Shown here: positions 16,700-52,541 of the stretch, piece after piece | How the letters are laid out: each line of letters opens with the position of its first letter | Position numbering within the stretch: the first letter of the stretch is position 1 | Assembly (NCBI RefSeq): GCF_963853765.1 | Contig: NC_088855.1 | Span: 59,644,001-59,708,000 of the forward strand | Source: Magallana gigas | Lineage: Eukaryota | Direction of reading: 5' to 3' | Length of the DNA stretch: 64,000 nucleotides | The notes under the pieces: generated by a model | Databases searched by the model: none | Told to the model about the DNA's origin: nothing | The model's input: the letters and a program-made list of their open reading frames with translations, nothing else | Program-made: the position numbers and the translations under genes

Positions 16700-17880
16700 C
16701 ATATAAACACAAACAAAAGAAGAAAAGCAAATAAAAAATATAACATGCACACCAACTTATAAGTGATAGTTCTAAATTTAAAGATTTTCCAATATTTGAT
16801 TATATTATACACAAGCAACAGCATGTACATAATATTAAGCATGTACATATTTTTATTTATGTGAGAAAAAAAGGAGGGAAAGAAAAAAAGCTAATGGGGC
16901 AATGGTTGCATTGCATTATATTTGTTTATCAGGGTTAAGATATTGATTATTTTAAAAAGCATAATACATTTTGTTAACAAGTAGTTAAGGATATAGAAGA
17001 AACTTGCTCAATTCTCCAATTGCTCTTGAATTTTTCAAATTCACAATTCTTTAAATGTAAATATTTTTCCACAAGAAGACTGATTTAGTTTTCCTTTTAA
17101 GTTCCAACACATTTAAAGTAGGTATATAAGTGAGAATATACTGTTTTACAATATAGCTTAACAGGTTTTGTACTTTATACATACTGTGATTTTTAAGAGT
17201 CACCAAAAAGTATGTTTTGCTTATCAAACATTAGAGACACCGTGTAGTTTCTTCAATGCCACTCCATAGTTCTTTTACAAATGGGCAATCTACAAAAATA
17301 TGACTCTCGAAAGCGAGATTAGTCAAGAGCGAGGTTAACATAAGCCTTTTGGCTTGTTTCTCAATCTTCTTTGTAGCGTTATTGTAATATGTATGATGCA
17401 ATTAAGAAATAAATATTGTTTAAACTAAAAATATGACTGTTTCAGAATCTTATTTACAAAAAGAGCATTTAGGAGAGTCAATAAGTTTGAGCTTATGTAA
17501 ATAATAATTTGTTGGTAATATCCTGTGTACAATTTGGAAATATAACCAATGGAATTTAGATTTTTAAATTGTCTTAAAAGGACGTTTAAATATTTTAAAC
17601 CAATAATTCTCATTAAAATATAGTGTCATATTCGCTTCTTATTTAAAAATTGCTTTATTTTGGACCTTCTTTTCCCTTATCAAAACGTTTTAAATATCTT
17701 TAGACCCTTTTCTATTTTTGTAGAATATGGCTTGTGTGTTTGAGATATATGTTCCAACTGTTGGTTTAATTTCTTTTACATTGCATTCACCTATTTGTTT
17801 TAATATACTCTTTTTTAGACCATTATATTCAACAAAATTAGGGGTTTTTTTATTTGAGCTTCTAATGTTTTCCATTTTTA
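16700..17880 (-). mobile_element. Degenerate L1/Tx1-type LINE ORF2 3-prime fragment
   Basis: HIFVDCPFVKELW zf-RVT-like motif at about 17255-17310; segment absent from the paralogous region downstream of copy D. Confidence 0.6.
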
Positions 17881-18449
17881 ACAGAGATATTTTTTTATTT
17901 TAATGTTCATAAAAACAAATACCCAAGATAAGACTTTTTGATCTACACATTGGCTTGAAATTTATTTTGGAGATACCGAAAACAATTAAAAGAAACAGAA
18001 TTGTAACTCCTTTGCAAACTTGCATTATAAATACTGAAAAATAACCACCCAATTTGACATACATTACAGATCTTTAATTACTTTAATAACGATTTCATGT
18101 AGCAATGATACAAATTTAAAATAGTGGTATTACTAAGTTTATCTATGTTTATCTATATGAACAATTTAAAAACCTTTTTTATATAGGATTTCACAATTTC
18201 TTTATTTGTTATTATCAAAGTATTGTGAAAAAGTTTCAAACTTGAACGTAAAGTTGGTTGAATTTTAATGTAGCAAAGTTTATACATTTACCCTATAACA
18301 ATTGCGTTTTCCAGTTTATATGAATTGTCCCTGTAATAGGCACTTAATATAACGAAGCAGTTGACGTCTTTATAAGATGTCTTGATCTTACTTTTTCTTG
18401 AATTTCTGCCGAGCATGGAAAAGAAAACTTTCGAAATCAAGTATACTTT

Positions 18450-22556: not shown

Positions 22557-22782
22557 TACTGTGGAATCATTTTAATTCGTGGGGGTCAATGTTTGTGGGT
22601 AACCCAAATTTTCTTGGCTCGTGGAGACGTCATTTCGTTGTAAGTATAATCATGATAAATTTAATAAATATTTTTTAAAAAATGATTGAGTATATGTTCA
22701 TGGGGATGTAAATTCGTGAACAAGGTTTACCCACGAAAACCACGAACATTGGTCCCCCACGAACAATGATGATTCCATAGTA
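22557..22782. mobile_element. Tc1/mariner-type MITE family (tactgtggaatc...gattccacagta)
   Basis: TIRs with TA ends; relatives at about 37060-37281 (left end lost), 40728-40950, 42493-42714 and 50401-50622. Confidence 0.75.
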
Positions 22783-23109
22783 TACTTATGTTTGGACTTT
22801 GTGTGACATTTATTCGGAGTCAATCAATATCGGATTCAAATATTTTGAGAACATCCATACATTGAAAATTTAAGTTAAAAGGTTTAGACCCTTGTCTATG
22901 TTAAATACGTGTTGCGTACCTTATCAAGACATGTGAGCATAATAGATGAACATATACCCTGATTGATTCTACTTTTGAATCGATTATATTGTAAACTTTG
23001 GAGGTGTTTTTAATTAAAATTGAATGTAGCTCACATAATTATAACCGGGACTTTGAGAAGCTTTAGATCATCTTTAAGAAACAAATAAAAAGCTAGCATA
23101 TTTCATAAG

Positions 23110-23470
23110 GAGATCGCTAGAGTTTACTCCATAGAAACCATCATCACAAGTCTCGCTACAGTCTACTCCATAGAAACCATCATCACAAGCCTCTCTAGTC
23201 TACTCCATAGAAACCATCATCACAAGTCTCGTTACAGCTTACTCCATAGAAACCATCATCACAAGCCTCCCTAGTCTACTCCATAGAAACCATCATCACA
23301 AGTCTCGCTACAGTCTACTCCATAGAAACCATCATCACAAGCCTCCCAAGTCTACTCCATAGAAACCATCATCACAAGCCTCCCTACAGTCTACTCCATA
23401 GAAACCATCATCACAAAGATCGCTAAAGTCTACTTCATAGAAATCATCTTAACAAAGATCGCTACAGTTT
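23110..23470 (-). repeat. Minisatellite of ~10 units alternating 39 and 37 bp, derived from EGF coding sequence
   Basis: actccatag anchors at 23126, 23165, 23202, 23241, 23278, 23317, 23354, 23393 and 23432 (variant); the 39-mer translates as TCDDGFYGVDCSE on the minus strand. Confidence 0.85.
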
Positions 23471-23819
23471 AATCCACAGGTTCCCCGGGCACACTTTTTA
23501 TGGAAAACTATAAAATCATTTATTATATTATGGTTATGTGATTAGACAGTACTATATTTTATCATGCTATGTATGTCTTAATATTATACCTATACATCGG
23601 TTTCCTATAAGAATATAGTTTGAACAGCAAATACCATTTCTGAAACATGCGATAGGGTAAGATAATGAAATCTGACATATCACACTTTCTTTGAGAATTG
23701 TATCGTTATAAAAAAATTGTTGCAGTTACTTACCAACACATATTTGGATCCACAAAGACATTCCTCAAAAACTCCTGAACAAAAACTAAAAATACTGACA
23801 TCTGTATAGAGTCGTCCAT
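23110..23819 (-). pseudogene. EGF-family pseudogene, copy G
   Basis: Signal exon 23819-23734 ends TG and joins the CC exon (23639-23590) to form TGA; the EGF exon lost its acceptor and is expanded into a minisatellite with stops and frameshifts. Confidence 0.75.
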
Positions 23820-25460: not shown

Positions 25461-26421
25461 TGGTTTTACCACTTTGTTTTTATTTTGACATGATATTTGT
25501 CTAGCACATTAAAAAAGAAAAAAAATCAATGTTTGAATTATTTGCAAATTCTGAAAATTAAATGGGAATTCTTGAGACCTTGTTGTACATCACATATCAC
25601 CATCAAATAGATTCGTGAATATGTTTGGTTTCTGGGCATAATGAATTTCAAGAAATTATATTAAATGATCATACAATGAAGAAAAAGGAAGATACTGATG
25701 TAAATAGAATCTTTGATATTAAAACTTTATCAATAATTGTGACAAAGATATGTGAAACAAACTTTATGTTTATATATTCTCCTTATGAATATTTACTATT
25801 TTAACTGATATTTAATTATGTTTTCATCAAGAAACATGTTTCCATGTTTATCATTTGTTTCTTGTAGCGAGATAGTCATATTTCAATGTCCATAAAAACA
25901 TATACCTAAGACAAGACTTTGTATCGTACACATTGGCCTAAGATCCATTTTAAAGATACCGAATTCAATTTAAAGTAACATAATTAGAACTCCTCATTAA
26001 ACTTGCATATGATTGTAAATACCAAGAAGTAAGGTACAGATTTATAATTACTTTGATAATTATTCCATGTAGCAATAATACAAAGACCAATAAAAGAAGT
26101 GGTGTAGTTAAGTTTTGGATAACTATTAAACTCATTTAAAAATCTTTGTAATGTAGGATTTCACAATTATCTTCATTTTGTTTTTATTAAATTATTGGTT
26201 AAACAATCTCTAAAAGTTCAAGAAAAAAGTTGAACGTAAAATTTGTTGAATTTCTGATAAAGCAAGGTTTGATACATTTACTCTAAAATTGCGTTTTCTA
26301 ATCTATATGAATTGTCCTTGCCATAGACACTTAACAGCAGTTGATGGCTTTTTCAGATGCCTTGATTTCACTTTTTCTTGGCAAGCATGGAAAAGAAAAG
26401 TTTTCAAATCAGGTGTACTTC

Positions 26422-29400
26422 TTAGAGCCAAATGCTTCCATACGCTTCGTTTGGTCTTCGCATTGATCGCTGCTCTGGTTGAGACGTCTTTGGTAGATCA
26501 GAGATTTGGACTTTGCTACATATCTCATTGCTTTCTTCAAATTCATCACTATCAAACATGTCATCACTTTCATCACTATAATCTTCATGTGACGTCATTT
26601 CCTTGGATACAACATTTTTACGAATTTGACTGTTGCACATTTTGACTTTGCTATATTCAACTTGTTCTAGCGGCACTGGTTTGTTGTTTTCATGAACCGG
26701 AGGAGGTGGTTGCACGCTCGTTGAATGTTGGATTGAAGCTTCATTATTTTCATAAAAGTTAGACTGTTGGGGATTCTGATCTGCTAAATGGTCTACAAAT
26801 GATAAAAATATCTATAGTACTATATTAAAATAATAGACTCGAATTTTTGGTCTTTAATACCGAGAAATCAGAAGAATACTGTCATTTGTTTTACACATTT
26901 TAAAGATCATCGGTACTTGAAGATTACCGATTTGTTTACATTTTTCTAAGTTAAGCTTCGCTAAGTAATAACCAACGAAAATTCCTCAAAACATCCCGGA
27001 AATCACCTGGATTTTTTGGATTTTACAATCTTGCGCTTGCGCAATACATTCACGCTAACAGGATCTTTAGTTTATGTTTCCACAATATCTCATCTGCATG
27101 AATAAACTCAGAAATGATAATACAAATACTGGTAAATTTTCATTGGACTTTTGATATATATTCTGTTCATATATATTAATGATTTCTTATAAGAGAAAGT
27201 ATAAAATAACAAATATACATTTTAACTAAGTACTTACTTTTGTCTTCGTGATGACAAAAAATATTTGATTACATGCAAAAAAGTTACATTAAATTTGTTA
27301 GGAGAGTGAAGATAGAATATGTTTTATGATAATCGTACGGACCCAGTTTTACAAAGAAAATACGTGTACGTTGGTGAAAAGGTGTTGAATTCTTCCATTC
27401 TATGGATTAAAATTTTTAGCTGAAAGGTATTTGCAGTCTCAAAAAGGTTTGTTCTGATGAACTTGGCTGTTATTTTCAAGGCAACTTCATTAACTTTCTC
27501 CAAAATCGATTCTGCAATTTTCTGCTACATTACGGGTAAAAGGGAGGCATTCTAACTGTGGTGAGGGCCTTTCCCAAGACACAGTTAGGATTATTCAAAG
27601 TAAGGAAAGTGTAGTGAAATTAATAGCAGTATTGTAGGCTAAAAGCTTTGTAATGTAAATGTTAATAATAAGGTGTGTCGATGTACCTATTTTGTAAATG
27701 TCCGATATGCAATGTCAACCCGTGCACGCACGGGTCAAAGTCTAGTAATATTATAAATATATTTAGTTGATACTTTGCACATGTGAATGGTAGATGAAAA
27801 CATAATTTGATTGTGAATCCTATTGAGGGTTTTATAAATCAATCATAACTTGTTCGGAACCGTTGCCTGCCGTATACCCTTAACATGATTAGGTTTGAAT
27901 ACCAAATGTTAATGTAAGAGGAAAACATAAATACTTTGTATTTTATATCCAATATAAAAATGGGTATAACAACAAGATTCTATAACCTTGATAACAGTCA
28001 TTGACCAAAACTTCACTATCAATTCTATTTATAATCCCCTAACATTTAATTAAAGCTATAAGACTGATCGAGTATTTATTCATATACAACTTCATGTTAG
28101 GAACCAAATGTAAAAACAAACAAAGGATTTTGTTTCTAAACTAAACATTTGATTTTGCATAGAAAAATGAAATATACCGATGATTCGTTCTTTGTCTTTT
28201 GTACTGAAAAAGGATAGATGCAATAATTATATATGATTTTGCTATATATGGCCTAAAATTTTCATGATTAACAAATAACTAGNNNNNNNNNNNNNNNNNN
28301 NNNNNNNNNNNNNNNNNNNNNNNNNNNNNNNNNNNNNNNNNNNNNNNNNNNNNNNNNNNNNNNNNNNNNNNNNNNNNNNNNNNNNNNNNNNNNNNNNNNN
28401 NNNNNNNNNNNNNNNNNNNNNNNNNNNNNNNNNNNNNNNNNNNNNNNNNNNNNNNNNNNNNNNNNNNNNNNNNNNNNNNNNNNNNNNNNNNNNNNNNNNN
28501 NNNNNNNNNNNNNNNNNNNNNNNNNNNNNNNNNNNNNNNNNNNTAAAACATAACAGACCACACACAGGAACAGAGGACAAATATTGACGATGTTCCAATA
28601 ACTATCCAGATGTTTCCTTCTACGAATTTTATAAGTTTTTTCTTTAGATCAGTATCCATACCTTCTAAATGAAAAAATAAAGCCAAATGCAAAAGGTAAA
28701 ACTATAAGCTTAAAGCACTTGATTCAAGGAAATTATAAATTTGATATTGTTAAGTGTAAGTAATCATATAAAAGGGGTAAATTGGTGCAGGTGTTAGTTA
28801 ATCATGCAAAATGAATTCTCATTGTTTTCACGACAAACGTCATTAGGAAACTTTGGAGGGAAATAAAATAGATTATATTGTATATAACAAATGAAAATTT
28901 GTTCTCAAAATACAAACAACATATCTTAATCTAATTGTTGAATGGTTGGCTTCTGAAAGTTAATAGTAAGCGAGAAAAACAAATGCTAACGAAATTCTTT
29001 ATTTTGTTTAGGATTGTTTGTGTATATATAAGCATTAATTACAAAGAAAAATACGAAATGCATTTTGTAGTGACACATTAAAACTTGTTAACGCATCACA
29101 TTACATATCAGCATTGTAAAATCTTGTCAAAATTTAGAAGCAAAATCAAATCCATTTCCCGTGTTGACATCTCATTGAATGTCTATTCTGAGGTTAACAT
29201 TAGACTTTTAGCTCCGCTCTACATTTGAAAGAATTTGATATACACAAACACAGTTAAGTTCATTATTCTCCTTCATCTAATCAATGAAAAACGTACCTCA
29301 CTAATATGTAATTTGTTTTTAAATGCCAAAGTTCAGTGGGTCTTCCCAATACAAGCTGATGTTGTTTACCTTTGTGAACTCGTTACCTTATATAATATCA

Positions 29401-36910: not shown

Positions 36911-37619
36911 TAAATTATTGCAAAGTAGCATGGTAAACTTTTTAATTTGAACTTTGAGCATCGATAATCCTAAGCATTAGGTAAAATATCTTTACCAATT
37001 CTAACATTCCTTAATACCTCCTCTTGGGTCTGACCAGTTTTTTGTGGTTTTTTGGCTTAATGGGGTTCAATGTTTGTGGGTAACCAAAATTTTCTTGGTT
37101 CGTGGAGACTTTATTTCGTTGGAAGTACATGTATAATCATGATAATTTTAATAAATATTTTAAAAATGTGTATAGGTTCGTGGAGATGTATATTCGTGGA
37201 CAGTCAAGTATTACCCACAAAAACCACGAACATTGCCCCCCCCCCCCCCCCCCCCCCCCCACCGATGATGATTCCACAGTATACTTATGTTTGGACTTTC
37301 TGTGACATTTATTCGCAGTCAGTCAATATCGGATTCAAATATTTTGAGAACATCCATACATTAAAAATTAAGTTAAAAGGTTCAGACACTCTATGTTAAA
37401 TACGTGTTTCGTACCTTATCAAGACATGTGAGCATACTACCCTGATTGATTCTACTTTTGAATCGATTATATTGTAAACTTTGGGGTGTTTTAATTAAAA
37501 GTGAATGTAGTTCTTATGATCATAACCGGGACCTTGAGAGAATTCGATTTGAAAGTAAAGCTTAAGATTATCTTTAAGAAACAAAGAAAAAGCTAGCATA
37601 TTTCATATGGAAAGGGATA

Positions 37620-39667: not shown

Positions 39668-41735
39668 TCAGTTCTTTCCTTTCAGTTTCTTTATCTTCAG
39701 TTGTAGGTATTCAATCTCTAGTTGTATCTTCTGTACTGCCAGATCATCCATACTTGTACTGTGGTTCATTAAATGGCACTCACATATTTTCTCTATATTT
39801 GCAAAACATGAAAAAGGAAAGACAGAATGAGATGTAAGGATAACATGTCTCGTATAACGCAAGTCAAAACATGTATTAAAACTCTTGTCTTACTCTAACG
39901 TCTAGACCCGCCACAATACTTAATAAAAATCAATCGTTTTATGCGATGCACTTTTGAAAACTACGCTGTGTGAAATAAAACTCTTTTAAGGTATTTATAT
40001 TCTTGATATGTTGTTCCAAAATGCAATATTAAAGGAAATGTTGCTTTTACCAGGACAATCTCCCGATATTTTGTCACATGTTTCGTTGCACTCTGATGGA
40101 CATTTCTTCTCGCATAACCGTCCAAAGAATCCATCGGGACAACCTTCACTGCAGTTGACTCCATATTTTCCAGGCGTACACTCTATCAAAAAGAATATTA
40201 TATTTATACATTTGTTTGGGGTTTCTTATTATCAGTACATGTACATGTAAATTGGTTAACTATATTTCGTAAACCTTAGTGATGATATTATGATATTGAA
40301 ATGTCATTAGTCTTATACCGATCAAATCTTAAATTCGCGACACCTATCAAATAGTCCAATCCACACTTTTCAAAATTGTTTACCTTTGAGGGGTCAACCC
40401 AAAGGTCAGAAGGGAAAAACCAAACTTTTTCCTTCTTTAGGCTACCAAATATTTGGGCGTCCTGTGATAAAATTTCTTTGAATTTAATTTATTTCTTCAA
40501 TGTGTGGGTTGCCCCATCCTAGGGCAATCAAAATTCACAACGGAAACGGAATTTTATTGCCAAATGAAAAGTTACAAACCTCTAAAATACAAAGGCTACT
40601 GTAAGAAACCTATAGGTTTTTCCCCAAAGATGGCGGCCAGGGGACATAACTTTTGTAAAGTGTGGATTGGTCTATACAGGACAGGAAACCAAGTCTTGCT
40701 ACAGGTGTTGCATATAGCAGAACCAAATACTGTGGAATCATATAAATTCGTGGGGGCAAATTTTCGTGGATTATGGGTTTTATGCTTATTCTTGGGGGAT
40801 GCAATTTCGTGGATTGGTCGGTTTTCAGTTTCAGTAAGAATAGTTACTCTTTCAAAATCTGTTTTCGTCGAGGATGTATATTCGTGGGGGAGGGCTACCC
40901 AGGAATACCACGAAAATTGAGCCACCACGAATTCTAATGATTCCACAGTAGTAGGGTATATGTTGTTCGTATCCAATTTAGTTTTGTTTCATAATTATTA
41001 TTTCACTGAAGAACTTTTTTATATTCCCTGGACTATTCCCACCCTTTGTCCTTATCTTTTTCATTAATATGTATACATTATACAAAACCATGGGCTTACA
41101 TCATATAACTGTTGAAACATTAATTTATCATATCATTGTCAATTCACATCATTATTTACTTATTCAAAACAAAACGCATATGTCATATTTGTATTTATCT
41201 TATTATCAATGTCTTGTATTGCTTCTTTTCAAATTTCGATCCTCTGAAAACCAAAACATGTTTTAACTATTATCATGTTACCTGGGCACTCTCCCGATAT
41301 TACGTCACATGTTTGGTCACACTGTAATGGACATACGTCCTTACATAAACGTCCATAGTATCCTTCCGGACAAGCTTCACTGCAGTTCACTCCATAAGTC
41401 CCCGCCGGGCACTCTAATGAAAATAAAATCGTATGTTCATTTTGTCAGATTTAATTATATAAATTTATTTTTCGGTAATTGTCAAAGTTCAGTATATACC
41501 TATGCACCTGTTCCCGTCAAATATATAGTTTGAGCAGCAAATATTGTATCTGTAAAATTGAAAATGGAGATTAACATATGTTAACAGCTGTTCATGTTCT
41601 GGTGGTGGTATTGTATGACAGTATCGACCAGTAACCTTACCCACACAGACTGGGATCCACCAAGACTGAGCCCAGACACAAATGGACACCAATAACCAGC
41701 AGTGCCGACTTGTAAAGATGTACTGTGTCCTCCAT
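39668..41735 (-). CDS. Secreted two-EGF protein with coiled-coil tail, copy E (177 aa)
   Basis: Exons 41735-41641 (signal), 41549-41500, 41413-41282, 40182-40051, 39792-39668 (EKICEC...VQKIQLEIEYLQLKIKKLKGKN*); 534 nt in frame; no TM segment. Confidence 0.75.
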
Positions 41736-43472
41736 GTCTTTAAAGAGCAGTATATGTGCTGGTGACAACTTCCCTGTGTATTTCTGTTAAATCTATATTT
41801 TGCCCTCTTGATTTTATGTAATACATAAATTTTCTCTAACAGGAAAATAACTCTTGTTTCCTCATTCTGATGTGACTTTTGGAAAATCATAAATACAGGA
41901 AAAAAGTTTGAATTTATTTATATTTGATACATGGGCATCGTACAATAGCGATGATTTCAAATTAATTACTCAACATAATGATATTGTGAAGGGAAAGTAT
42001 CTGAAAATAAAATTTCTTGTTTGCCAATGAACATGAACGTTATAATTTCATAATTGTTATGCTACCGATATGATGAGAAAACAGATATCATGCCACGCGT
42101 TTTACGATAAAAAAAAAGAAGAAGAAGGAAGTTACTCCTTTGTAGCAGAATATAGCAGAATATTAAATATCAATATTTAATATAACTGACCTTTTGGCGT
42201 CCAATAACATTACATTTATAGAGTAAACAGGATATACATAGACATCATCTCACATTTTGTTCAGTAATATTGTATTTTTGTTTCTAGAAAACAGAACCTT
42301 TGCTTTTAAAAACCATTGTATTTCAAAGTATACACAAGAATAATTTTTAATTGCATGTTAAGTAAAAAACATATTCTATAAAAAGCAACTAAATTATTTT
42401 GATTTTGCAGGTTATTTGCAAAAGTACAACCATTTGTTTAATTGAAAATGACAAAAAAATAGAAGATTCAATTTAAGTACAATACAATAAACTACTGTGT
42501 AATCATTAAATTTCGTGGTGGCTCAATTTTCGTGGAATTCGTGGATACCTCTCATCCACGAATGAACATCCTCCACAAATTAAAAAAGATGGTAATAAAG
42601 TAACATTCCCTTTTGTCAATACAAGAGAATACACGAAATTACGTCCCAAAAAACCTGTAAAATTTAAGCTATCCACGAAAATTGGCCCCCACGAAATTTA
42701 ATGATTCCACGGTATACTTTAAAATATATACATTGGCAATTTACGTAAGTGAGTACAAATATAAAAATAGCATCAATTAATCATCTTTTCAGAAAACAAA
42801 TTGATCGTACTGATCAATCAATAGCACAAAATAGATTCAGAGCTAGCGTCCTGCGTGGTGTCGACGCCATTTCAGATCAATCATTAAATGTTGTAAATTA
42901 TCTTTCAATGTTAGATCATCTTATCTTACACCAGCACAGCTCACTAACCATCCAATGTAATTTTAAGGAAAATAAATAACGCAAAAGTTGCTCTGCTGTT
43001 TTGTAACTTTCCTTTGGACTTTCGATTTTGAACACTTTTTGTTATCACCATGTTTCATAGAAAATTTCAAGATGCATTTCAAAAAGTTACATAAAAAGTC
43101 TACTCCAAATTCATGACCAGACTACTTTAATCGAATTGTAATCAATCAAAAGTAATAGCACGCCTTTTTACAATCAACAGAGTATATCTTTTTGATATAC
43201 ATGTAATATGTTGCTACTTTAATGAACGTTGTCATTAAATAGACAAACACAGCTTAAGCGCACTCATGTCCTGTCATTTATTTACAGATGAAATACATGT
43301 ATATATCCCTTTACAAATTTTGATTTATTATCACAAAGTTTAAATAAGATTAACAAATGAAAACATCAAATAAATTAGCTTATACAATGGTATTCAATAA
43401 CAATCTTAGAGTCAATCTGAAGCGTCAAAGTTTATAACGTTTATACTTTATTACTTCCTCTTGATTATTTAT
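41263..43472. repeat. 2,210-bp direct duplication, copy 1 (copy 2 at 49171-51380)
   Basis: Constant offset of 7908; ORF-track translations are identical in both copies. Confidence 0.95.
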
Positions 43473-43838
43473 ACAAGGAAATAAGAACAAGATATGTGAT
43501 TTTATAGTTTTATTTGGCGAACATTGGCCGTGGCATATTACTTTGTGGGATGCCAATAAACACACAACTTTTGGGCAAACCCACACAAAATCAACAAATG
43601 CATCAAAATTTATACAACACACAACATATGTTAAATGGCCACCCCGGGTAAACCGCGGGTGGTTACTTATTTAAATGTAAGTTATATGCACAAAACAATG
43701 TGAATCCACATCAAGCAAATATTTTACAAACAAAATGGTTTAGCATTTTACCCCCCTTCACAGTTCAATGGTGACAACTTCACAATAATACAAAGCTTAC
43801 ATAGGCCTCAGTTGCTTTGGTGTGCGCAAGCGCCACAT
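43464..43838 (-). repeat. Split direct repeat B2 (375 bp; B1 at 44228-44602)
   Basis: Matching sequence at offset 764. Confidence 0.95.
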
Positions 43839-44003
43839 CAGTGCTTATGCCACGACATTTCTTGAAAAGAACCAATAGATACGCCTTCCAATGTTATAAT
43901 CTGCAAAATCAAAGGAAAAGCCAGCAGCAAAAAAACAAAAAAACAAGCATATATCTGCATTGAAAACTTTATTTCCTAAACAAATTGGGAAAGGGTGGGC
44001 GGG

Positions 44004-44133
44004 ATATTTAAGGCGGATGCAAGAACTTTACAGCATATAATTTAAAAAAAATTCTCCCATACAATTTTTCAACCTACTCCTATTCAGCAACTTTTGGAAA
44101 AGGATGTTGATCCCGAGCTTCCAGACTTAAATA
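44004..44133 (-). repeat. Split direct repeat A2 (130 bp; A1 at 49041-49170)
   Basis: Matching atatttaaggcgg...ccagacttaaata in both places. Confidence 0.95.
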
Positions 44134-44705
44134 ATAAAAGAAGGCCGCAGGCCGATCCCGACCAAAATTAAGATAACCCTTTCCCGTAAAATAAAGTCAT
44201 CGATTTTATATGCATAAAATAGATGGTATTATTTATACAAGGAAATAAGAACAAGATATGTGATTTTATAGTTTTATTTGGCGAACATTGGCCGTGGCAT
44301 ATTACTTTGTGGGATGCCAATAAACACACAACTTTTGGGCAAACCCACACAAAATCAACAAATGCATCAAAATTTATACAACACACAACATATGTTAAAT
44401 GGCCACCCCGGGTAAACCGCGGGTGGTTACTTATTTAAATGTAAGTTATATGCACAAAACAATGTGAATCCACATCAAGCAAATATTTTACAAACAAAAT
44501 GGTTTAGCATTTTACCCCCCTTCACAGTTCAATGGTGACAACTTCACAATAATACAAAGCTTACATAGGCCTCAGTTGCTTTGGTGTGCGCAAGCGCCAC
44601 ATGACAGCGAACAATTAAAGGAGAGTTCGCAGTCATCCCACACATGGGGGAGCACCCAAGCAACTGAAAAAAGCCCCCACGAACCAATGTTCTCTGGAAC
44701 AAGTT

Positions 44706-45284
44706 TTAAGGATATACCTGCCCCAGTTGCGACTGGAAGAATTCTAATCCCCCTTGGAAATTATTGAGGAAGAGCTTATTTCCTAACTCGTTGAGATGGA
44801 CGCCATCAGGCATCAGAAATTGGGACATGTTTCTCAACAGATCAGGGTGCTTAATGTAACAACCCCCCAATTTTAAAACTGATGAGGCAGCTACCCTATT
44901 GGCCTTGAGACGGCATCTCTCCATTGCTTTGTTATCATTAGAATACCTCCATTTAATTCGTGGAAGCATCTGTGACCAAACAAGTGTGGACTGTGGAAAT
45001 TGAACTTTAATAAATTGTAAGTGGGTTTTAATTTTTTGAATTAATGAAAACAGATCAATAGCCCCAATATCATTCACCCCACAGTGAATAATTAAGTAGT
45101 CTGGTGATTCTTCATATTGTGTTAGAAAAAAGAGCTTTCTTTTCAGCTCCAAAAACTTCAAACCTGAATATCCTTGCCACCAAATATTCATATTCAATCT
45201 ATCCAGTCCTAGATTTGATCCCCCCGGTCTGCATACTGATGCCATCATAGCATTCTTGATAATAGATGAGCCCACACACCACAC
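44706..45284 (-). CDS. SGNH/GDSL-type hydrolase ORF of the retrotransposon
   Basis: Blocks VGSS, GG, HCGVND and DGVHLN all present; the ORF-track start is GTG, so the true start is uncertain. Confidence 0.8.
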   Translation of the reverse strand: MWCVGSSIIKNAMMASVCRPGGSNLGLDRLNMNIWWQGYSGLKFLELKRKLFFLTQYEESPDYLIIHCGVNDIGAIDLFSLIQKIKTHLQFIKVQFPQSTLVWSQMLPRIKWRYSNDNKAMERCRLKANRVAASSVLKLGGCYIKHPDLLRNMSQFLMPDGVHLNELGNKLFLNNFQGGLEFFQSQLGQVYP

Positions 45285-45348
45285 TGTAACTTCAGGGACC
45301 TCTACAATTCCAGCAAGAATAAGTATTGAACCTGATTACTTTTAAAAA

Positions 45349-46350
45349 TTACATCTTATTTGTTCCTAACATCTGCCCAATAGGACATCTTATGTATGTC
45401 CTATATGCCCTAGACTTCCAACGGCCTGCTTCCATTATAATATCCTGTGTGCACCCAGCCTCAAATGCTAAAGTGGCTGCCCCTATACGAAACGAATGGG
45501 CCCTATAATGTCCCTCAACTCCAAGAGCATGAAGTGCTTTTTCTAAAATAGCTGAGAACTGATACCTAGTAAGAGGGTTCTTTCCCAAATGAATGAACAA
45601 TGGGCCTTTAATTTTTGGTCGAACAGCAAGATAATCAATCAAACCTGCTACTGGACACAAAATTCCCTCAATTCTATCAATGACCAGAGAAACACCCTTC
45701 CTATCCTGATCAGTTTTTGAGCTTTTTATGAGTACCAAGAGCTTGGAGTAATTAGCTTGAAACTGTACATCTGTCACTTGCAATATTGAATGAACACCAT
45801 TACCAGTAGACAATGCAAATTCCCCTATTCTGAGAAAACCAAAGAAAGCTAATAAATATGCAGCTCGAAACAACTTTGTTTCATAGGTATCATGACAAAT
45901 ACCTGGTAAAGTCTCCACAAGTTGTTTGAGTAATTCCAAGGTTATAGGTAACCTTGCATCAGCAGACCTACCAATTCTTCTCATACCTTCAAGAACCTTC
46001 AGAACAAGGAAGTTTTTTGTTTCATCAACCAAATTTTGAACTTTGCATTGAAAACTAATGGATGATAAGTAAGACCTAGCCGTAGCATAAGAACATTTCT
46101 TAAGTGACAAATAAGAAACAAATTGAACAACGTCCCTGAGTGGTGGGGGCCATAAAATCTCGTACCCAAATTCTCTCCGGAAATTAAAAAATGATCTTAG
46201 CCCTGTTTCATAAGATGTCTTGGTGTTGCTGGAGATTGAAGCATCTAACAATTTGTTCATTTGAATCTGTAAATCATGTTGACTAATTCTAATGGAATTG
46301 GGTCTGGTCTGGTGTGTGCCTCTGGTGCCAACCTCTTGAAGCGGTACCAC
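45349..46350 (-). CDS. Tyrosine recombinase
   Basis: FLRIGE, HSFRIGAAT and GRWKSRAYRTY catalytic motifs. Confidence 0.92.
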   Translation of the reverse strand: MVPLQEVGTRGTHQTRPNSIRISQHDLQIQMNKLLDASISSNTKTSYETGLRSFFNFRREFGYEILWPPPLRDVVQFVSYLSLKKCSYATARSYLSSISFQCKVQNLVDETKNFLVLKVLEGMRRIGRSADARLPITLELLKQLVETLPGICHDTYETKLFRAAYLLAFFGFLRIGEFALSTGNGVHSILQVTDVQFQANYSKLLVLIKSSKTDQDRKGVSLVIDRIEGILCPVAGLIDYLAVRPKIKGPLFIHLGKNPLTRYQFSAILEKALHALGVEGHYRAHSFRIGAATLAFEAGCTQDIIMEAGRWKSRAYRTYIRCPIGQMLGTNKM

Positions 46351-47972
46351 TGTTTGCGAGACAAAGAATCTGCAACTTTGTTATCCAAGCTAAATATGTG
46401 TTTTGCCCTAAATATAACATTGTTCATCATAAGTCTAAAAACCAAATGTCTTACCAATTCCATAACTCTTTTTGATTTGGAAGATTGGGTATTGATGACA
46501 CTTACTAGTGAAAGGTTATCCACATGGAACTGAACCTTTTTGTGTTGCAACCTAATTCCCCATAACTCTATTGCTAATACTACAGGTATGAGCTCTAAAA
46601 AAGTCATGTCCCTCAAAATGTCTTGGTTGTTCCAATGAGCTGGCCACTGTAGAAAAAACCAACTCCCCCTAAAGTAACCCCCACAACCTAAATGACCTGA
46701 GCCTGCACTATCTGTAAATAATTGCAAAATGCTAGAATCTTCCCATACAGTATCAGGAAAATATGCTACCCCATTGAAGTGGTCTAAGAACACAAGCCAC
46801 ATTTTAAGGTCACTTTTAATTCCAACTGATAATCTTATGTGATGGTGTGGCTTAAAAACCCCTCTAAATGCATCATACATTCTTCGAATAAAGGCTCTAC
46901 TAGACCTGATTGCCTTTGAGAAAAAATTCAGCATTCCAACTAATGATTGCATTTCTTGCAACCTAACCTTTTCTCTACCTAAAAAGCTCTCAATTAGGTT
47001 CCTAAGGATATTTACCTTTGCTTCTGGGATCCTAATAATCATCTCCAATGTATCTATTTCAAAACCTAGAAATATTAACTTAGTTGTTGGGCCTGAAGTT
47101 TTATCATGAGCTAGTGGTACCCCTATTTCTTTAGCTAAGTGACTAAAAGTAGACATAAGTATTGCACATTCTTGACTTCCACACCTTCCTGCAAAAATGA
47201 AATCATCCAAATAATGATCTAAGGTATTCAGCCCAGACTTAAACTGTGTCAGCCAATGTAGAAAAGTTGCGAATGTTTCCCAAATTTTGCAACTTATAGA
47301 ACATCCCATGGGAAGACATTTGTCTATGTAATATGAGCCATCTACCGAGAAGCCTAACAAATCAAAATCCCCTGGATAGATAGGAATTAAACGAAATGCA
47401 CTTTTAACATCCATCTTCCCTATCAAGGCACCCCTTCCCAAACTGGCAATCATGTCAACTACACCATCAAAAGATGCATATTGAACTGTACATAAATCTG
47501 GATCTATAAAGTCATTGATCCCACGATCACTAGGGTAGGATAAATGAGTTATCATTCGCCACCCCCCATCCGATTTTGGAACAATGCCAACTGGCGAAAT
47601 GTGAAGGTTGGAAATAGGCAGTTGGTCAAAAGGACCCATAATCCTGCCCAGCTTAATTTCTTTACTTATCTTATCCATCAAATGATCATGGTGTTCAGTT
47701 GCAGACTTGAGATTTTTTGAATACACATGAAACCTTGGGCCAGTATAATTAATTTCAAAACCTTTGGAAAAACCATTTTTTAAATAATTAGCAGCATATT
47801 TGTCTGGGTATGATTGTAAATACTCATCTAACACTTTAGTTCTAATAGGGGAAGTTCCTAGGGCCCATATATCTTTGTGGTCTTGGGGTTTGTGTTGGGT
47901 GTGACACAGGGGGTCTAAACTGGGATTGTCCCTGCAATGGTGCCCTGGGGCGATTTGTGGCCTTGAACACAT
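46257..47972 (-). CDS. Reverse transcriptase / RNase H
   Basis: KMDVKSAF, LPMG and YLDD motifs; DIRS-type RNase H FTDSAG...LEL...HVDN. Confidence 0.93.
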   Translation of the reverse strand: MCSRPQIAPGHHCRDNPSLDPLCHTQHKPQDHKDIWALGTSPIRTKVLDEYLQSYPDKYAANYLKNGFSKGFEINYTGPRFHVYSKNLKSATEHHDHLMDKISKEIKLGRIMGPFDQLPISNLHISPVGIVPKSDGGWRMITHLSYPSDRGINDFIDPDLCTVQYASFDGVVDMIASLGRGALIGKMDVKSAFRLIPIYPGDFDLLGFSVDGSYYIDKCLPMGCSISCKIWETFATFLHWLTQFKSGLNTLDHYLDDFIFAGRCGSQECAILMSTFSHLAKEIGVPLAHDKTSGPTTKLIFLGFEIDTLEMIIRIPEAKVNILRNLIESFLGREKVRLQEMQSLVGMLNFFSKAIRSSRAFIRRMYDAFRGVFKPHHHIRLSVGIKSDLKMWLVFLDHFNGVAYFPDTVWEDSSILQLFTDSAGSGHLGCGGYFRGSWFFLQWPAHWNNQDILRDMTFLELIPVVLAIELWGIRLQHKKVQFHVDNLSLVSVINTQSSKSKRVMELVRHLVFRLMMNNVIFRAKHIFSLDNKVADSLSRKQWYRFKRLAPEAHTRPDPIPLELVNMIYRFK

Positions 47973-48834
47973 GGTTAGAAAGGGGACACTGGTATTGTGG
48001 ATGAGCCCCTGAACATCTTATACACTTATGCATGTACTGACAAGACGGTCTGTCACAAATTCCCTTGAAATTGAAATTATAGCACTTGTTAAATGCTGGG
48101 CTATTTGGGCTAAGTGTAACTTTAGATTGCGGAGATGATGTCATAAACATCAACCATAACTCATAGTCTACTTTAGACCATTGTTTGGTGGGATCGATAC
48201 TGCGGCGAAGTCTAAATTGTTCATCATATTTCTTCCAGCCCAAATCTCCCTCCCCACATCTTGATGCCCCTAGTCTAATGTCATGCAAATATTTCAGAAG
48301 ACCTTGAAAAGATTCTGGATGGGCCGAAGCATAGATACTTGCATAAACTAAAAATGCATCTGTCCATCTACTGATAGATTGAATCTTTATGCTGGGCCTA
48401 ACTACCTCTCTTGTGACCAACTCACCCTTATCATTAAAAAATATTCTTTTCTCTGAAGATTCCGTCAGAGAAGTATTATCAAGCAATAAGCTAATGTCAA
48501 TGTATGACGAACTGATAATTTTTGATTTCAATGAGTTAGAGACATTGCTAGATAACAATGTATGAATGCTATCGACGTATTGACTTTCAACACCAATGCT
48601 TGTACCTGATTGAATAGCTAAAGCAGGAACAGGTGTTGGGGGCAAACTTTGGTTCACGGTTGCCACATCTTCACTTTCTATTGCGATGGCGCATTCCCTG
48701 CTTCGTGATGGACCTGGTTCCTGAGATGCCTGATCGTCAGTGGATGGAGCTGATCGCTCGGGTCTTGACCTCTTTGACCTTGATCCCTTCCCCTCGTGGT
48801 GTCTGCAATTCCGCTTATTATTTTTTGGTGGCAT
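47842..48834 (-). CDS. Gag-like ORF1 with C-terminal Cys/His zinc-finger region
   Basis: 330-aa ORF overlapping the RT ORF; CYNFNFKGICDRPSCQYMHKCIRCSGAHPQYQC. Confidence 0.85.
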   Translation of the reverse strand: MPPKNNKRNCRHHEGKGSRSKRSRPERSAPSTDDQASQEPGPSRSRECAIAIESEDVATVNQSLPPTPVPALAIQSGTSIGVESQYVDSIHTLLSSNVSNSLKSKIISSSYIDISLLLDNTSLTESSEKRIFFNDKGELVTREVVRPSIKIQSISRWTDAFLVYASIYASAHPESFQGLLKYLHDIRLGASRCGEGDLGWKKYDEQFRLRRSIDPTKQWSKVDYELWLMFMTSSPQSKVTLSPNSPAFNKCYNFNFKGICDRPSCQYMHKCIRCSGAHPQYQCPLSNHVFKATNRPRAPLQGQSQFRPPVSHPTQTPRPQRYMGPRNFPY

Positions 48835-49170
48835 TTCCGCTCATTAAAATGAACAATACACATACAATAACTCACTTGAGATTAAAAACACGATTTTAAA
48901 AAAAAATACAAATTATATGTATAGTGCCTACTGATAACACCCTGCTTTTAATCCGGCCCCATCAATAGAAAATATAGACGCCAGATTAAAATTAATGTAA
49001 AACACAATTAACTTGTCTATCCGTTAATGAAATTTCATATATATTTAAGGCGGATGCAAGAACTTTACAGCATATAATTTAAAAAAAATTCTCCCATACA
49101 ATTTTTCAACCTACTCCTATTCAGCAACTTTTGGAAAAGGATGTTGATCCCGAGCTTCCAGACTTAAATA

Positions 49171-51380
49171 TTAACTATTATCATGTTACCTGGGCACTCT
49201 CCCGATATTACGTCACATGTTTGGTCACACTGTAATGGACATACGTCCTTACATAAACGTCCATAGTATCCTTCCGGACAAGCTTCACTGCAGTTCACTC
49301 CATAAGTCCCCGCCGGGCACTCTAATGAAAATAAAATCGTATGTTCATTTTGTCAGATTTAATTATATAAATTTATTTTTCGGTAATTGTCAAAGTTCAG
49401 TATATACCTATGCACCTGTTCCCGTCAAATATATAGTTTGAGCAGCAAATATTGTATCTGTAAAATTGAAAATGGAGATTAACATATGTTAACAGCTGTT
49501 CATGTTCTGGTGGTGGTATTGTATGACAGTATCGACCAGTAACCTTACCCACACAGACTGGGATCCACCAAGACTGAGCCCAGACACAAATGGACACCAA
49601 TAACCAGCAGTGCCGACTTGTAAAGATGTACTGTGTCCTCCATGTCTTTAAAGAGCAGTATATGTGCTGGTGACAACTTCCCTGTGTATTTCTGTTAAAT
49701 CTATATTTTGCCCTCTTGATTTTATGTAATACATAAATTTTCTCTAACAGGAAAATAACTCTTGTTTCCTCATTCTGATGTGACTTTTGGAAAATCATAA
49801 ATACAGGAAAAAAGTTTGAATTTATTTATATTTGATACATGGGCATCGTACAATAGCGATGATTTCAAATTAATTACTCAACATAATGATATTGTGAAGG
49901 GAAAGTATCTGAAAATAAAATTTCTTGTTTGCCAATGAACATGAACGTTATAATTTCATAATTGTTATGCTACCGATATGATGAGAAAACAGATATCATG
50001 CCACGCGTTTTACGATAAAAAAAAAGAAGAAGAAGGAAGTTACTCCTTTGTAGCAGAATATAGCAGAATATTAAATATCAATATTTAATATAACTGACCT
50101 TTTGGCGTCCAATAACATTACATTTATAGAGTAAACAGGATATACATAGACATCATCTCACATTTTGTTCAGTAATATTGTATTTTTGTTTCTAGAAAAC
50201 AGAACCTTTGCTTTTAAAAACCATTGTATTTCAAAGTATACACAAGAATAATTTTTAATTGCATGTTAAGTAAAAAACATATTCTATAAAAAGCAACTAA
50301 ATTATTTTGATTTTGCAGGTTATTTGCAAAAGTACAACCATTTGTTTAATTGAAAATGACAAAAAAATAGAAGATTCAATTTAAGTACAATACAATAAAC
50401 TACTGTGTAATCATTAAATTTCGTGGTGGCTCAATTTTCGTGGAATTCGTGGATACCTCTCATCCACGAATGAACATCCTCCACAAATTAAAAAAGATGG
50501 TAATAAAGTAACATTCCCTTTTGTCAATACAAGAGAATACACGAAATTACGTCCCAAAAAACCTGTAAAATTTAAGCTATCCACGAAAATTGGCCCCCAC
50601 GAAATTTAATGATTCCACGGTATACTTTAAAATATATACATTGGCAATTTACGTAAGTGAGTACAAATATAAAAATAGCATCAATTAATCATCTTTTCAG
50701 AAAACAAATTGATCGTACTGATCAATCAATAGCACAAAATAGATTCAGAGCTAGCGTCCTGCGTGGTGTCGACGCCATTTCAGATCAATCATTAAATGTT
50801 GTAAATTATCTTTCAATGTTAGATCATCTTATCTTACACCAGCACAGCTCACTAACCATCCAATGTAATTTTAAGGAAAATAAATAACGCAAAAGTTGCT
50901 CTGCTGTTTTGTAACTTTCCTTTGGACTTTCGATTTTGAACACTTTTTGTTATCACCATGTTTCATAGAAAATTTCAAGATGCATTTCAAAAAGTTACAT
51001 AAAAAGTCTACTCCAAATTCATGACCAGACTACTTTAATCGAATTGTAATCAATCAAAAGTAATAGCACGCCTTTTTACAATCAACAGAGTATATCTTTT
51101 TGATATACATGTAATATGTTGCTACTTTAATGAACGTTGTCATTAAATAGACAAACACAGCTTAAGCGCACTCATGTCCTGTCATTTATTTACAGATGAA
51201 ATACATGTATATATCCCTTTACAAATTTTGATTTATTATCACAAAGTTTAAATAAGATTAACAAATGAAAACATCAAATAAATTAGCTTATACAATGGTA
51301 TTCAATAACAATCTTAGAGTCAATCTGAAGCGTCAAAGTTTATAACGTTTATACTTTATTACTTCCTCTTGATTATTTAT
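49171..51380. repeat. 2,210-bp direct duplication, copy 2
   Basis: Matches 41263-43472. Confidence 0.95.
49190..49643 (-). CDS. Copy F: duplicated 5-prime exons of copy E, cut off by the retrotransposon
   Basis: Exons 49643-49549, 49457-49408, 49321-49190 match E; the next intron runs into A1 at 49170. Confidence 0.7.
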
Positions 51381-51399
51381 GATTCCTTTGATAAACTTT

Positions 51400-51720
51400 A
51401 ATCGTCGCCATAGAATAAAAGTATTCTGAATTTCGGGATATGCCTTTCTAATGGTATTCTTCTGAATTCTAAGCTAGTATTTTAGGTTAAAATGCATGGT
51501 GTTAGGTTTGAGGTATGAAAATATGTTTTGTACAGAGAGTGTTACCGATCTTGGAGAAGGTGAAATTTTTCTATATTTGAAATCTTGTATTCTTGTTCTA
51601 TGCTGACGATACTTTTATCTCGCTGAAAAAGCTAATAATTTAAAATTTATTTACTGTGTGAAGTTTTGCACAAATTGCATAACTAAGTATACAGCAGATG
51701 AATTCTTTTGTACTTCAATG
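51400..51720 (+). mobile_element. Degenerate LINE RT fragment
   Basis: LFYADDTFI motif at about 51593-51620 in a disrupted frame. Confidence 0.5.
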
Positions 51721-52541
51721 TAATACGTTTTTGTGAATTTTATATATAGTGTGTGTTGTGTGCGTGCGTGCGTGATTTGATGAACGACCGAACACTTTTA
51801 AATATTGTAAATGCTGGCATATCAACTCACCCTTAAAAATCTAGATTAGCTTCATAGGTTACGCGGGTCGCTGATCTTATGTATTTATTTTGTCGCGTTT
51901 TTTGGTTTTGTTTTTTGTTGTTGTTTTTTTTTTTTTTGTAATTTATGCTGTTTTTTTTTAATTTCGACAATTTGTCGACTTGATATAATTTGGTATTTTG
52001 ATTGCGTATATACTTTTGAATCAAAATTAATGTGCTCACTGAAATCTTATTGTTCATTTTTAATCTTTATACTTATATACACATGGATGACATTTTATTG
52101 GGAATGGGAAAATCGTGTGTTAATAATTGTATACATGGTATAGTGAGAGGGCTACATAAGTTTAGAACTTGTATCCATACATTACTCATTGTAATTATAT
52201 TGCAAGAAAATAAGTTCAGATCAATTTGTTATTTGAATAGAAAGATATTTATAACCTTGTACCACAAATTAATTAAGGTGTAGTTAAATAAATTGTATTC
52301 TAAACCTCATTTTGGATTTAACAAATAGTTAAGGTTTTAAACTGATCATGATTACGCATAAGATAATTACATATACTTACAACTGATTAATACAAAATTT
52401 ATCTTTAATCATTTATCAGTTTTAAATATACATGAAGTGATAAATATAGTTTTTCTCTAGGCCCTGATGAATCACTCTTGAGGAACTAGTCTTTTTACCT
52501 GTGAGAAATAGGACGGAAAAGTGAGATCGCCTGATCGTTAA

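What the first reader, a model, noticed from the sequence alone, without database searches (positions are those of the whole stretch)
41263..51380. Tyrosine-recombinase retrotransposon flanked by a 2,210-bp direct duplication of host DNA
Seen: host 41263-43472 recurs at 49171-51380, and the element ends (B2 and A1) sit exactly at the inner boundaries. Neither junction pair rebuilds a simple empty site, so the two element ends are joined to host positions 2.2 kb apart. Established: DIRS/Ngaro elements integrate by tyrosine recombination and normally leave no long TSD. Inference: unequal exchange between two nearby allelic insertions, integration across sister chromatids, or a chimeric assembly of two haplotypes. 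If real, it is a route by which YR elements expand gene clusters.
Basis: partly seen in the sequence, partly recalled or inferred. Interest (0 to 1): 0.8.

Follow-up and report, generated by a model that had tools for sequence, protein, structure and literature searches.

The report
Oyster retroelement inside a 7.9-kb duplication
A young, intact Ngaro-type jumping gene sits between two perfectly identical 2.2-kb copies of oyster DNA; one end is a normal insertion junction and the other is a broken end joined to DNA 2.2 kb away, so this looks like an ordinary recent tandem duplication, still unconfirmed by reads, that copied one EGF-like exon.

Summary
Window 41263-43472 equals 49171-51380 (2,210 bp, no mismatch), and the block occurs nowhere else in the 564-Mb assembly.

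Between the copies lies a 5.7-kb Ngaro-type tyrosine-recombinase retroelement on the minus strand, with four open ORFs.

- **B2 end (43464-43472):** a canonical crossover inside a 9-bp identity, ATTATTTAT, shared by the element's internal B1/A2 circle junction and the host.
- **H2|B (51366-51386):** the intact, unoccupied target site.
- **A1 end:** not canonical. It lacks the outer ~94 bp that five other copies in this genome carry, and is joined bluntly to host DNA.

One illegitimate junction (49170|49171) therefore explains everything. It defines a 7,908-bp direct duplication with one breakpoint inside a freshly inserted element. The block also carries a 132-nt, phase 1-1 EGF-like exon of a paralogue cluster.

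I could neither confirm nor refute the junction with public reads. The assembly's size and scaffold count match a published 48x HiFi/hifiasm genome, which makes an artefact less likely but not excluded.

"Two allelic insertions" and "giant TSD" are not supported.

Verdict: probably real, mechanistically ordinary, modest interest.

The parts
41263..43472 (.). Host block H, copy 1 (2,210 bp). Its last 9 bp (43464-43472, ATTATTTAT) are shared with the element's B2 end.
49171..51380 (.). Host block H, copy 2, 100% identical to copy 1. It ends in the intact target core 51372-51380, followed by the original downstream host DNA.
43464..49170 (-). Ngaro-type YR retroelement. In element orientation: truncated A1 - gag-like - RT/RNase H - YR - SGNH/GDSL hydrolase - B1 - A2 - 165-bp spacer - B2.
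43464..43838 (-). B2 repeat (375 bp, identical to B1). Its outer end is the canonical 3' terminus of the element.
44004..44227 (-). A2 repeat, full length (224 bp): 44004-44137 is also present in A1, and 44138-44227 is the outer 90 bp that A1 of this copy lacks.
44228..44602 (-). B1 repeat. The B1/A2 boundary (core ATTATTTAT at 44228-44236) reproduces the circle junction, i.e. the attachment site.
44706..45284 (-). ORF4, GDSL/SGNH hydrolase-like (192 aa).
   Evidence: PF13472, E 2.7e-6, below the gathering score
45349..46350 (-). Tyrosine recombinase ORF.
   Evidence: PF00589 28.7 bits and PF02899 25.4 bits, both above their cut-offs
46257..47972 (-). Reverse transcriptase / RNase H ORF.
   Evidence: PF00078, E 2.2e-13; RVT_3 weak
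47842..48834 (-). gag-like ORF1 (330 aa, no Pfam hit). It overlaps the pol ORF.
49041..49170 (-). A1 repeat, truncated: only the inner ~130 of ~224 bp are present.
49170..49171 (.). J3, the single illegitimate junction: the element 94 bp short of its 5' terminus joined to the first base of H. No microhomology and no filler.
51366..51386 (.). Unoccupied target site, CTCTTG-ATTATTTAT-GATTCC.
41282..41413 (-). 132-nt phase 1-1 EGF-like exon (8 Cys) with an AG acceptor and a GT donor. The H boundary lies 19 nt beyond the donor.
49190..49321 (-). Duplicate copy of the same exon, in H2.

Best explanation
A Ngaro element inserted canonically, by its tyrosine recombinase, at an ATTATTTAT core in a putative intron of an EGF-repeat gene.

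During or shortly after that insertion, one non-homologous blunt join connected the element, 94 bp short of its 5' (A1) end, to a point 2,210 bp back along the host sequence on a chromatid that still carried the empty site. That chromatid was either a sister or the homologue. The result is A-H-E(truncated)-H-B: a 7,908-bp direct duplication with one breakpoint inside the element.

An equivalent route is an intrachromosomal tandem duplication, A-H-E(truncated)-H-E-B. In that case the second, complete element was later lost by crossover with an empty allele or by excision, or the assembly switched haplotype inside H2.

Shown: the canonical B2 junction, the intact empty site, the truncated A1, the blunt junction, and the perfect identity of the copies.

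Inferred: the order of events, the kind of partner chromatid, and whether the join arose by breakage and rejoining or by a replicative template switch.
For: - **Canonical crossover.** The B2-side junction CTCTTG-ATTATTTAT-ACAAGG is the crossover product expected between the internal circle junction GATGGT-ATTATTTAT-ACAAGG and the host site CTCTTG-ATTATTTAT-GATTCC. That host site survives intact at H2|B.
- **Truncated A1.** The outer ~94 bp of A1 are missing here. They are present at the A1 end of five other copies in the same assembly.
- **One event.** J3 is at once the duplication boundary and the truncation point, so a single event accounts for both.
- **Recency.** There is no difference in 2,210 bp between the H copies, none in the 375-bp B repeats, and the A1 and A2 copies are identical over the 130 bp they share (49041-49170). 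This copy has only two private substitutions against 16 other copies or contigs.
- **Local history.** The locus carries older tandem duplications at 80-91% identity.
- **Assembly method.** The assembly's size and scaffold count match a published 48x HiFi, hifiasm assembly. In such an assembly a junction without sequence overlap has to be present in reads.
- **An independent contig.** A contig from another run (L043) begins exactly at base 49170, as expected if the sequence branches there.
Against: - No read or contig bridging 49170|49171 was seen.
- The 60-mer across the junction listed no run, but only 2 words were sampled.
- Laying reads showed no listed bridging piece, and most rows were not shown.
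- Word depth on H is 2-2.7 times that of the downstream flank in X15 and X16. Heterozygous flanks explain this equally well, because the H contig breaks at 49228, not at 49171.
- The model needs either an occupied and an empty chromatid in one cell, or a second step that removes a complete element.
- The match to the published genome is inferred from size and scaffold number alone.
Confidence: 0.55

Rival explanations
1. Assembly artefact. The individual is heterozygous for a normal insertion (A-H-E-B) and an empty site (A-H-B), and the contig was built through a chimeric read or a wrong graph path.
For: - The H copies are exactly identical in a highly polymorphic species.
- No independent sequence bridging J3 was found.
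- The published assembly that matches in size needed heavy curation: 108 joins or mis-joins were corrected and 68 haplotypic duplications removed.
- H2|B is just what the empty haplotype would contribute.
Against: - J3 has no sequence overlap, so an overlap-based assembler cannot invent it. It would need a chimeric read joining two points 8 kb apart, in the same orientation, at the same locus.
- There is no N gap at J3.
- HiFi reads are long enough to span a 2.2-kb repeat.
- L043 ends exactly at 49170.
Confidence: 0.22
2. Campbell-type integration of a circle. A circular DNA made of the truncated element plus H, closed at J3, recombined with an empty allele. The recombination was either by the element's own recombinase at the ATTATTTAT core or by homologous recombination within H. 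Either route duplicates H around the element.
For: - The product is topologically identical to what is seen.
- It explains the perfect identity and the intact site at H2|B in one integration step.
- Elements of this order are proposed to use circular DNA intermediates.
Against: - An RNA origin for such a circle is disfavoured. The element has its own AATAAA at position 325 of 375 in B. There are 12 further AATAAA/ATTAAA hexamers in H. H ends without a signal or an A tail. J3 lies ~45 nt downstream of the start site predicted from the TATAAA at A position 18.
- A DNA origin needs an excision that creates J3 and then a reintegration, which is two rare steps.
Confidence: 0.1
3. One reading: two independent insertions of the element 2.2 kb apart on two alleles, followed by homologous exchange within the element.
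For: It would give the same gross topology. The element family is young and low in copy number.
Against: - The A1-side junction is not an integration junction. It lacks the outer 94 bp that five other copies carry.
- The host there has no similarity to the core.
- No second insertion allele was seen.
Confidence: 0.03
4. A 2.2-kb target-site duplication made at integration, by breaks 2.2 kb apart that were filled in.
For: A direct duplication immediately flanks the element.
Against: - YR integration is conservative and leaves no fill-in duplication.
- The C2 copy shows only a few shared bases at its ends.
- One end is truncated, and the empty site is intact at H2|B.
Confidence: 0.02

Closest known systems
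Ngaro retrotransposons (order DIRS), including those with a hydrolase ORF
   Same: - RT/RNase H plus a tyrosine recombinase, with no DDE integrase.
- Split direct repeats in the layout A1-[ORFs]-B1A2B2 (PMC8547959).
- An extra hydrolase ORF, as reported for some Ngaro elements (PMC7192593).
- Short sequence identity between the circle junction and the target.
   Different: - A 165-bp spacer lies between A2 and B2.
- This copy lacks the outer 94 bp of A1.
- It is flanked by a 2.2-kb duplication, which is not a feature of the family.
Ordinary tandem duplications with blunt or microhomology junctions (NHEJ or replicative template switching)
   Same: A head-to-tail duplication defined by one novel junction, without homology at the breakpoint. 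It lies in a locus with older tandem duplications.
   Different: - One breakpoint lies inside a just-inserted retroelement.
- The second unit lacks the element. This requires an empty partner chromatid or a later loss.
Flanking duplications made by alternative (sister-chromatid or reversed-ends) transposition of maize Ac/Ds. This comparison is from my own knowledge and was not checked here.
   Same: The topology host-element-host, with the element at the join of a direct duplication.
   Different: That is a cut-and-paste DDE transposon using canonical ends on two chromatids. Here one end is not a transposon end at all.

Membership tests
Ngaro (DIRS order) YR retrotransposon | Encodes a reverse transcriptase/RNase H and a tyrosine recombinase instead of a DDE integrase | tested here: met
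   RVT_1 E 2.2e-13; Phage_integrase 28.7 bits (cut-off 27.1); Phage_int_SAM_1 25.4 bits (cut-off 22.3)
Ngaro (DIRS order) YR retrotransposon | Split direct repeats in the order A1-[ORFs]-B1-A2-B2 | tested here: met
   44004-44137 = 49041-49174 and 43464-43838 = 44228-44602. On the minus strand this reads A1-ORFs-B1-A2-(165 bp)-B2. Layout as in PMC8547959.
Ngaro (DIRS order) YR retrotransposon | Both termini together reconstitute the internal B1/A2 junction, with no fill-in TSD | tested here: not met
   This copy: the B2 terminus fits, but the A1 terminus lacks ~94 bp. The feature is met by the C2 copy of the same family. The family assignment therefore stands, and this copy is a truncated member.
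Ngaro (DIRS order) YR retrotransposon | No methyltransferase domain (which distinguishes DIRS1 and PAT); an optional hydrolase ORF | tested here: met
   no methyltransferase hit in any of the four ORFs. ORF4 hits Lipase_GDSL_2, E 2.7e-6 (sub-threshold).
Simple tandem duplication | One novel junction; all other adjacencies are those of the parental sequence | tested here: met
   A|H1, H1|E and H2|B are parental (occupied or empty allele). Only 49170|49171 is new.
Simple tandem duplication | The second unit repeats the whole first unit up to the breakpoint, so a second element copy is expected after H2 | tested here: not met
   H2 is followed directly by flank B, with an intact empty site. This needs an empty partner chromatid, a later loss, or a haplotype switch.
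Real structure rather than assembly artefact | Reads of the sequenced individual span 49170|49171 and both H copies | tested here: inconclusive
   no run was listed for the junction 60-mer (2 sampled words). No bridging piece was listed. The depth ratios are ambiguous.

The most novel reading that the evidence does not exclude
The element mobilised its own 3' host flank. A circle carrying the element plus 2.2 kb of downstream host DNA was reintegrated, by the element's own recombinase at the ATTATTTAT core, into the empty allelic site. A YR retroelement would then have directly produced an in-frame exon duplication. This would be a transduction-like route to exon or gene-cluster growth not described for this order.
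Probability: 0.07. Interest if true: 0.7.

Novelty: new member of a known kind. Interest (0 to 1): 0.32.

Why it matters
If the junction is real, this is a cleanly dissected, very recent structural variant. A young retroelement of a little-studied order sits at the breakpoint of a duplication that adds one in-frame EGF-like module to a gene of an expanding oyster family.

It also gives an unusually clear integration site for a Ngaro element. The occupied junction, the intact empty site and the internal circle junction all lie in one window, sharing a 9-bp core.

It does not show that YR elements drive gene-cluster expansion. The duplication junction itself looks like generic non-homologous joining.

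Tried and rejected
**Searches that gave nothing usable**
- Run search with the 60-mer centred on J3: none was listed, and only 2 words were sampled.
- Laying two contig runs and two raw-read runs on 46500-52400:
  - No listed piece or joint at J3.
  - The raw reads were only 2-3.4x and uneven.
  - The contigs carry only the majority letters of the element family at 48880-48897, so they cannot identify this particular copy.
  - The depth ratio H:B of 2-2.7 is also explained by heterozygous flanks.
- Exact-protein look-ups of ORFs spanning J3 (two), J2 and J1, and of the largest ORF in H: all not on record, so they are uninformative.
- Exact-pattern scans of metagenome contigs for J3 and J2: none.

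**Readings rejected**
- An RNA read-through (transduction) origin: disfavoured by the positions of polyadenylation and TATA signals.
- Back-splicing or a lariat origin for J3: the junction lies 19 nt past the splice donor, not at it.
- A duplication of H first, then insertion at the H|H joint, then a deletion: the deletion would have to end exactly at the first base of H2.
- The 133-aa ORF in H as a 7TM gene fragment: a sub-threshold hit and a junk-like sequence.

**Literature**
- A search for YR-element-associated flanking duplications found no precedent.
Full report
**1. The observation**

A self-comparison of the window shows that 41263-43472 and 49171-51380 are identical over 2,210 bp, with no mismatch and no gap. 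The bases just outside differ on both sides.

Searched against the whole assembly (564 Mb), the block occurs only at these two places. The one exception is a ~225-bp MITE inside it (42491-42717 and 50399-50625), which has more than 100 copies. The duplication as described is therefore in the sequence and is not chance.

**2. The element**

The 5.7 kb between the copies is a retroelement on the minus strand with four open ORFs:
- gag-like, 47842-48834;
- RT/RNase H, 46257-47972 (RVT_1, E 2.2e-13);
- tyrosine recombinase, 45349-46350 (Phage_integrase and its SAM-like N-domain, both above Pfam's cut-offs);
- GDSL/SGNH hydrolase-like, 44706-45284.

Its repeats are 43464-43838 = 44228-44602 (375 bp, 100%) and 44004-44137 = 49041-49174 (134 bp; the single mismatch, at 49171, lies beyond the element's end at 49170). 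On the minus strand this reads A1-[ORFs]-B1-A2-(165 bp)-B2. That is the split-direct-repeat layout given for Ngaro elements (PMC8547959). Hydrolase ORFs are known in some Ngaro elements (PMC7192593).

The family is low in copy number in this genome. The only other ~99% copy is on contig C2, and an 8.8-kb insertion splits it.

**3. The junctions**

- **The circle junction.** The internal B1/A2 boundary, which in this order of elements reproduces the joined ends of the circular intermediate, reads GATGGT-ATTATTTAT-ACAAGG.
- **The empty site.** The host at H2|B reads CTCTTG-ATTATTTAT-GATTCC.
- **The B2 junction.** The junction H1|element reads CTCTTG-ATTATTTAT-ACAAGG. This is exactly the product of a conservative crossover within a 9-bp identity, so the B2 end is a bona fide integration junction. 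H2|B is the intact, unoccupied target site.
- **The A1 junction.** The expected partner, GATGGT-ATTATTTAT-GATTCC, is absent. Instead the element stops at 49170. In the C2 copy the same repeat continues for another 90 bp plus the core before host DNA begins. The A1 ends of four further related copies (two on C1, one on C5, one on C9) also run through this stretch to the same terminus.

So this copy is truncated by about 94 bp at its 5' end. The truncated end is joined to the first base of H with no shared bases and no filler.

Every adjacency except 49170|49171 (J3) is that of either a normally occupied or an empty allele. One illegitimate junction accounts for both the truncation and the duplication. 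The repeated unit, H plus the truncated element, is 7,908 bp.

**4. What H carries**

On the minus strand, which is also the element's strand, H contains a 132-nt exon (41282-41413, duplicated at 49190-49321).
- It has an AG acceptor and a GT donor.
- It is phase 1 at both ends.
- It encodes an eight-cysteine EGF-like module. Its Pfam EGF hits are only sub-threshold.

The H boundary lies 19 nt beyond the donor.

Paralogous exons lie at about 7.1, 14.7, 20.9, 30.1 and 40.0 kb on the same strand. The window also holds older, diverged segmental duplications at 80-91% identity. The locus is thus a tandem paralogue cluster.

The new event duplicates one symmetric exon and about 2 kb of putative intron, not a gene. 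Whether the two exon copies are spliced together across 7.8 kb that contains a sense-oriented element with its own AATAAA was not tested.

**5. Age**

- The H copies show no difference in 2,210 bp.
- The 375-bp B repeats are identical.
- The A1 and A2 copies are identical over the 130 bp they share (49041-49170).
- This copy has only two private substitutions (48880, 45527) against the C2 copy and 15 contigs from other public runs.

Insertion and duplication are both very recent.

**6. Is it real?**

I could not settle this.

- **Run search.** The 60-mer across J3 had only two sampled words, and no run was listed. A 3.4-kb query listed runs holding 0.90-0.94 of its words (X15-X18), and raw-read runs of the same species.
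- **Laid reads.** On 46500-52400, no listed contig piece, joint or loose end speaks to J3, and most rows were not shown.
- **Contig limits.** At 48880-48897 X15's contig shows only the majority letters of the element family and no X16 contig was laid there, so they do not resolve this copy.
- **Depth.** Word depth over H is 2-2.7 times that of flank B: 23.8 against 8.76 in X15, and 181 against 74 in X16. However, the H contig breaks at 49228 rather than at 49171, and the X15 flank contig is a variant haplotype. Homozygous H between heterozygous flanks explains the ratio as well as a duplication does.
- **Raw reads.** The two raw-read runs (about 2x and 3.4x read) cover H poorly.
- **Other look-ups.** Exact-protein look-ups for junction-spanning ORFs and metagenome pattern scans were blank, and the control look-ups were blank too.

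Two indirect points favour reality.
- **Assembly method.** The assembly's size and scaffold number (563,985,803 bases in 29 pieces) match the published Pacific oyster genome note. That note reports 564.0 Mb in 29 scaffolds, 48x HiFi, hifiasm, purge_dups and YaHS (PMC11267148). If that is the source, a junction with no sequence overlap must exist in reads, and reads of that kind span a 2.2-kb repeat.
- **An independent contig.** A contig from an unrelated public run (L043, ERR12033102) begins exactly at base 49170. This is the last base shared by the canonical and the J3 continuations, as expected if that sample's graph branches there. This is suggestive only.

**7. Mechanism**

The best-supported reading is a canonical recombinase-mediated insertion at the ATTATTTAT core. 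A blunt non-homologous join came with it or soon after. That join connected the element, 94 bp from its 5' end, to a point 2,210 bp back on a chromatid carrying the empty site.

An equivalent route is an intrachromosomal tandem duplication followed by loss of the second, complete element, or a haplotype switch of the assembly within H2. I cannot tell breakage-and-rejoining from a replicative template switch.

Alternatives considered:
- **Circle carrying host DNA.** A circle of truncated element plus H, integrating by a single crossover, gives the same product. An RNA read-through origin for it is disfavoured. The element has AATAAA at position 325 of the 375-bp B repeat, and there are 12 more such hexamers in H. 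H ends without a signal or an A tail. J3 lies about 45 nt downstream of the start site predicted from the TATAAA at position 18 of A.
- **Two allelic insertions.** This fails because J3 is not an integration junction.
- **A 2.2-kb TSD.** This fails because YR integration is conservative and because the empty site is intact.
- **Duplication first, then insertion and deletion.** The deletion would have to end exactly on the first base of H2.

**8. Comparison and verdict**

The element is a member of the Ngaro group with a hydrolase ORF. This copy is a 5'-truncated member.

The flanking duplication is not a property of the family. It has the anatomy of an ordinary tandem duplication with one breakpoint in a new insertion. 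The topology recalls the flanking duplications made by alternative Ac/Ds transposition (my own knowledge), but here one end is not a transposon end.

A literature search found no report of such a structure for YR retroelements.

The structure is probably real, but no reads yet support it, and the mechanism is probably generic. Interest is modest.

Noticed in passing
window 42491-42717 and 50399-50625; inverted partner at 40727-40952: A ~225-bp MITE with ~45-bp terminal inverted repeats and more than 100 copies at 84-89% identity across the genome. The copy in H and the one at 40727-40952 are in inverted orientation 1.5 kb apart, and they bracket the duplication breakpoint at 41263.
   Followed up: partly
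L012:1441-1500 and L013:3875-3934 (G000:C2, about 20542722-20551555): The only other ~99% copy of the element is split by an 8.8-kb insertion. The insertion has perfect terminal inverted repeats of about 30 bp and a TTTAA (or TTAA) target duplication at the position equivalent to window 46803-46807. This suggests a DNA transposon nested in the Ngaro element.
   Followed up: no
window 23114-23476, minus strand: A tandem array of ~76-bp units encoding short Cys-rich CxEACDDGFYG-type repeats, next to one of the EGF-like paralogue exons.
   Followed up: no
window 17-1391 / 13116-14490; 7141-7691 / 14783-15333; 16251-19376 / 25551-28267; 22580-23058 / 37061-37539: Older segmental duplications at 80-91% identity. 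They show that the EGF-like paralogue cluster grew by repeated tandem duplication with periods of about 7.6-14 kb.
   Followed up: partly
L041 (ENA metagenome contig, 5,097 bp): A contig that is circularly permuted relative to the element (RT-YR-hydrolase-B-A-gag-RT). It is most simply a de Bruijn path through the A repeat, but it is also what a circular or tandem form would give.
   Followed up: no
window 46500-49170 in runs X15 and X16: Word depth over the element is 5-7 times that of single-copy flank B, whereas the assembly holds only two ~99% copies. The family may therefore have further, unassembled or heterozygous, insertions in those samples.
   Followed up: no
window 47842-47972: The gag-like and pol ORFs overlap by 131 nt in different frames, which suggests a programmed frameshift.
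   Followed up: no
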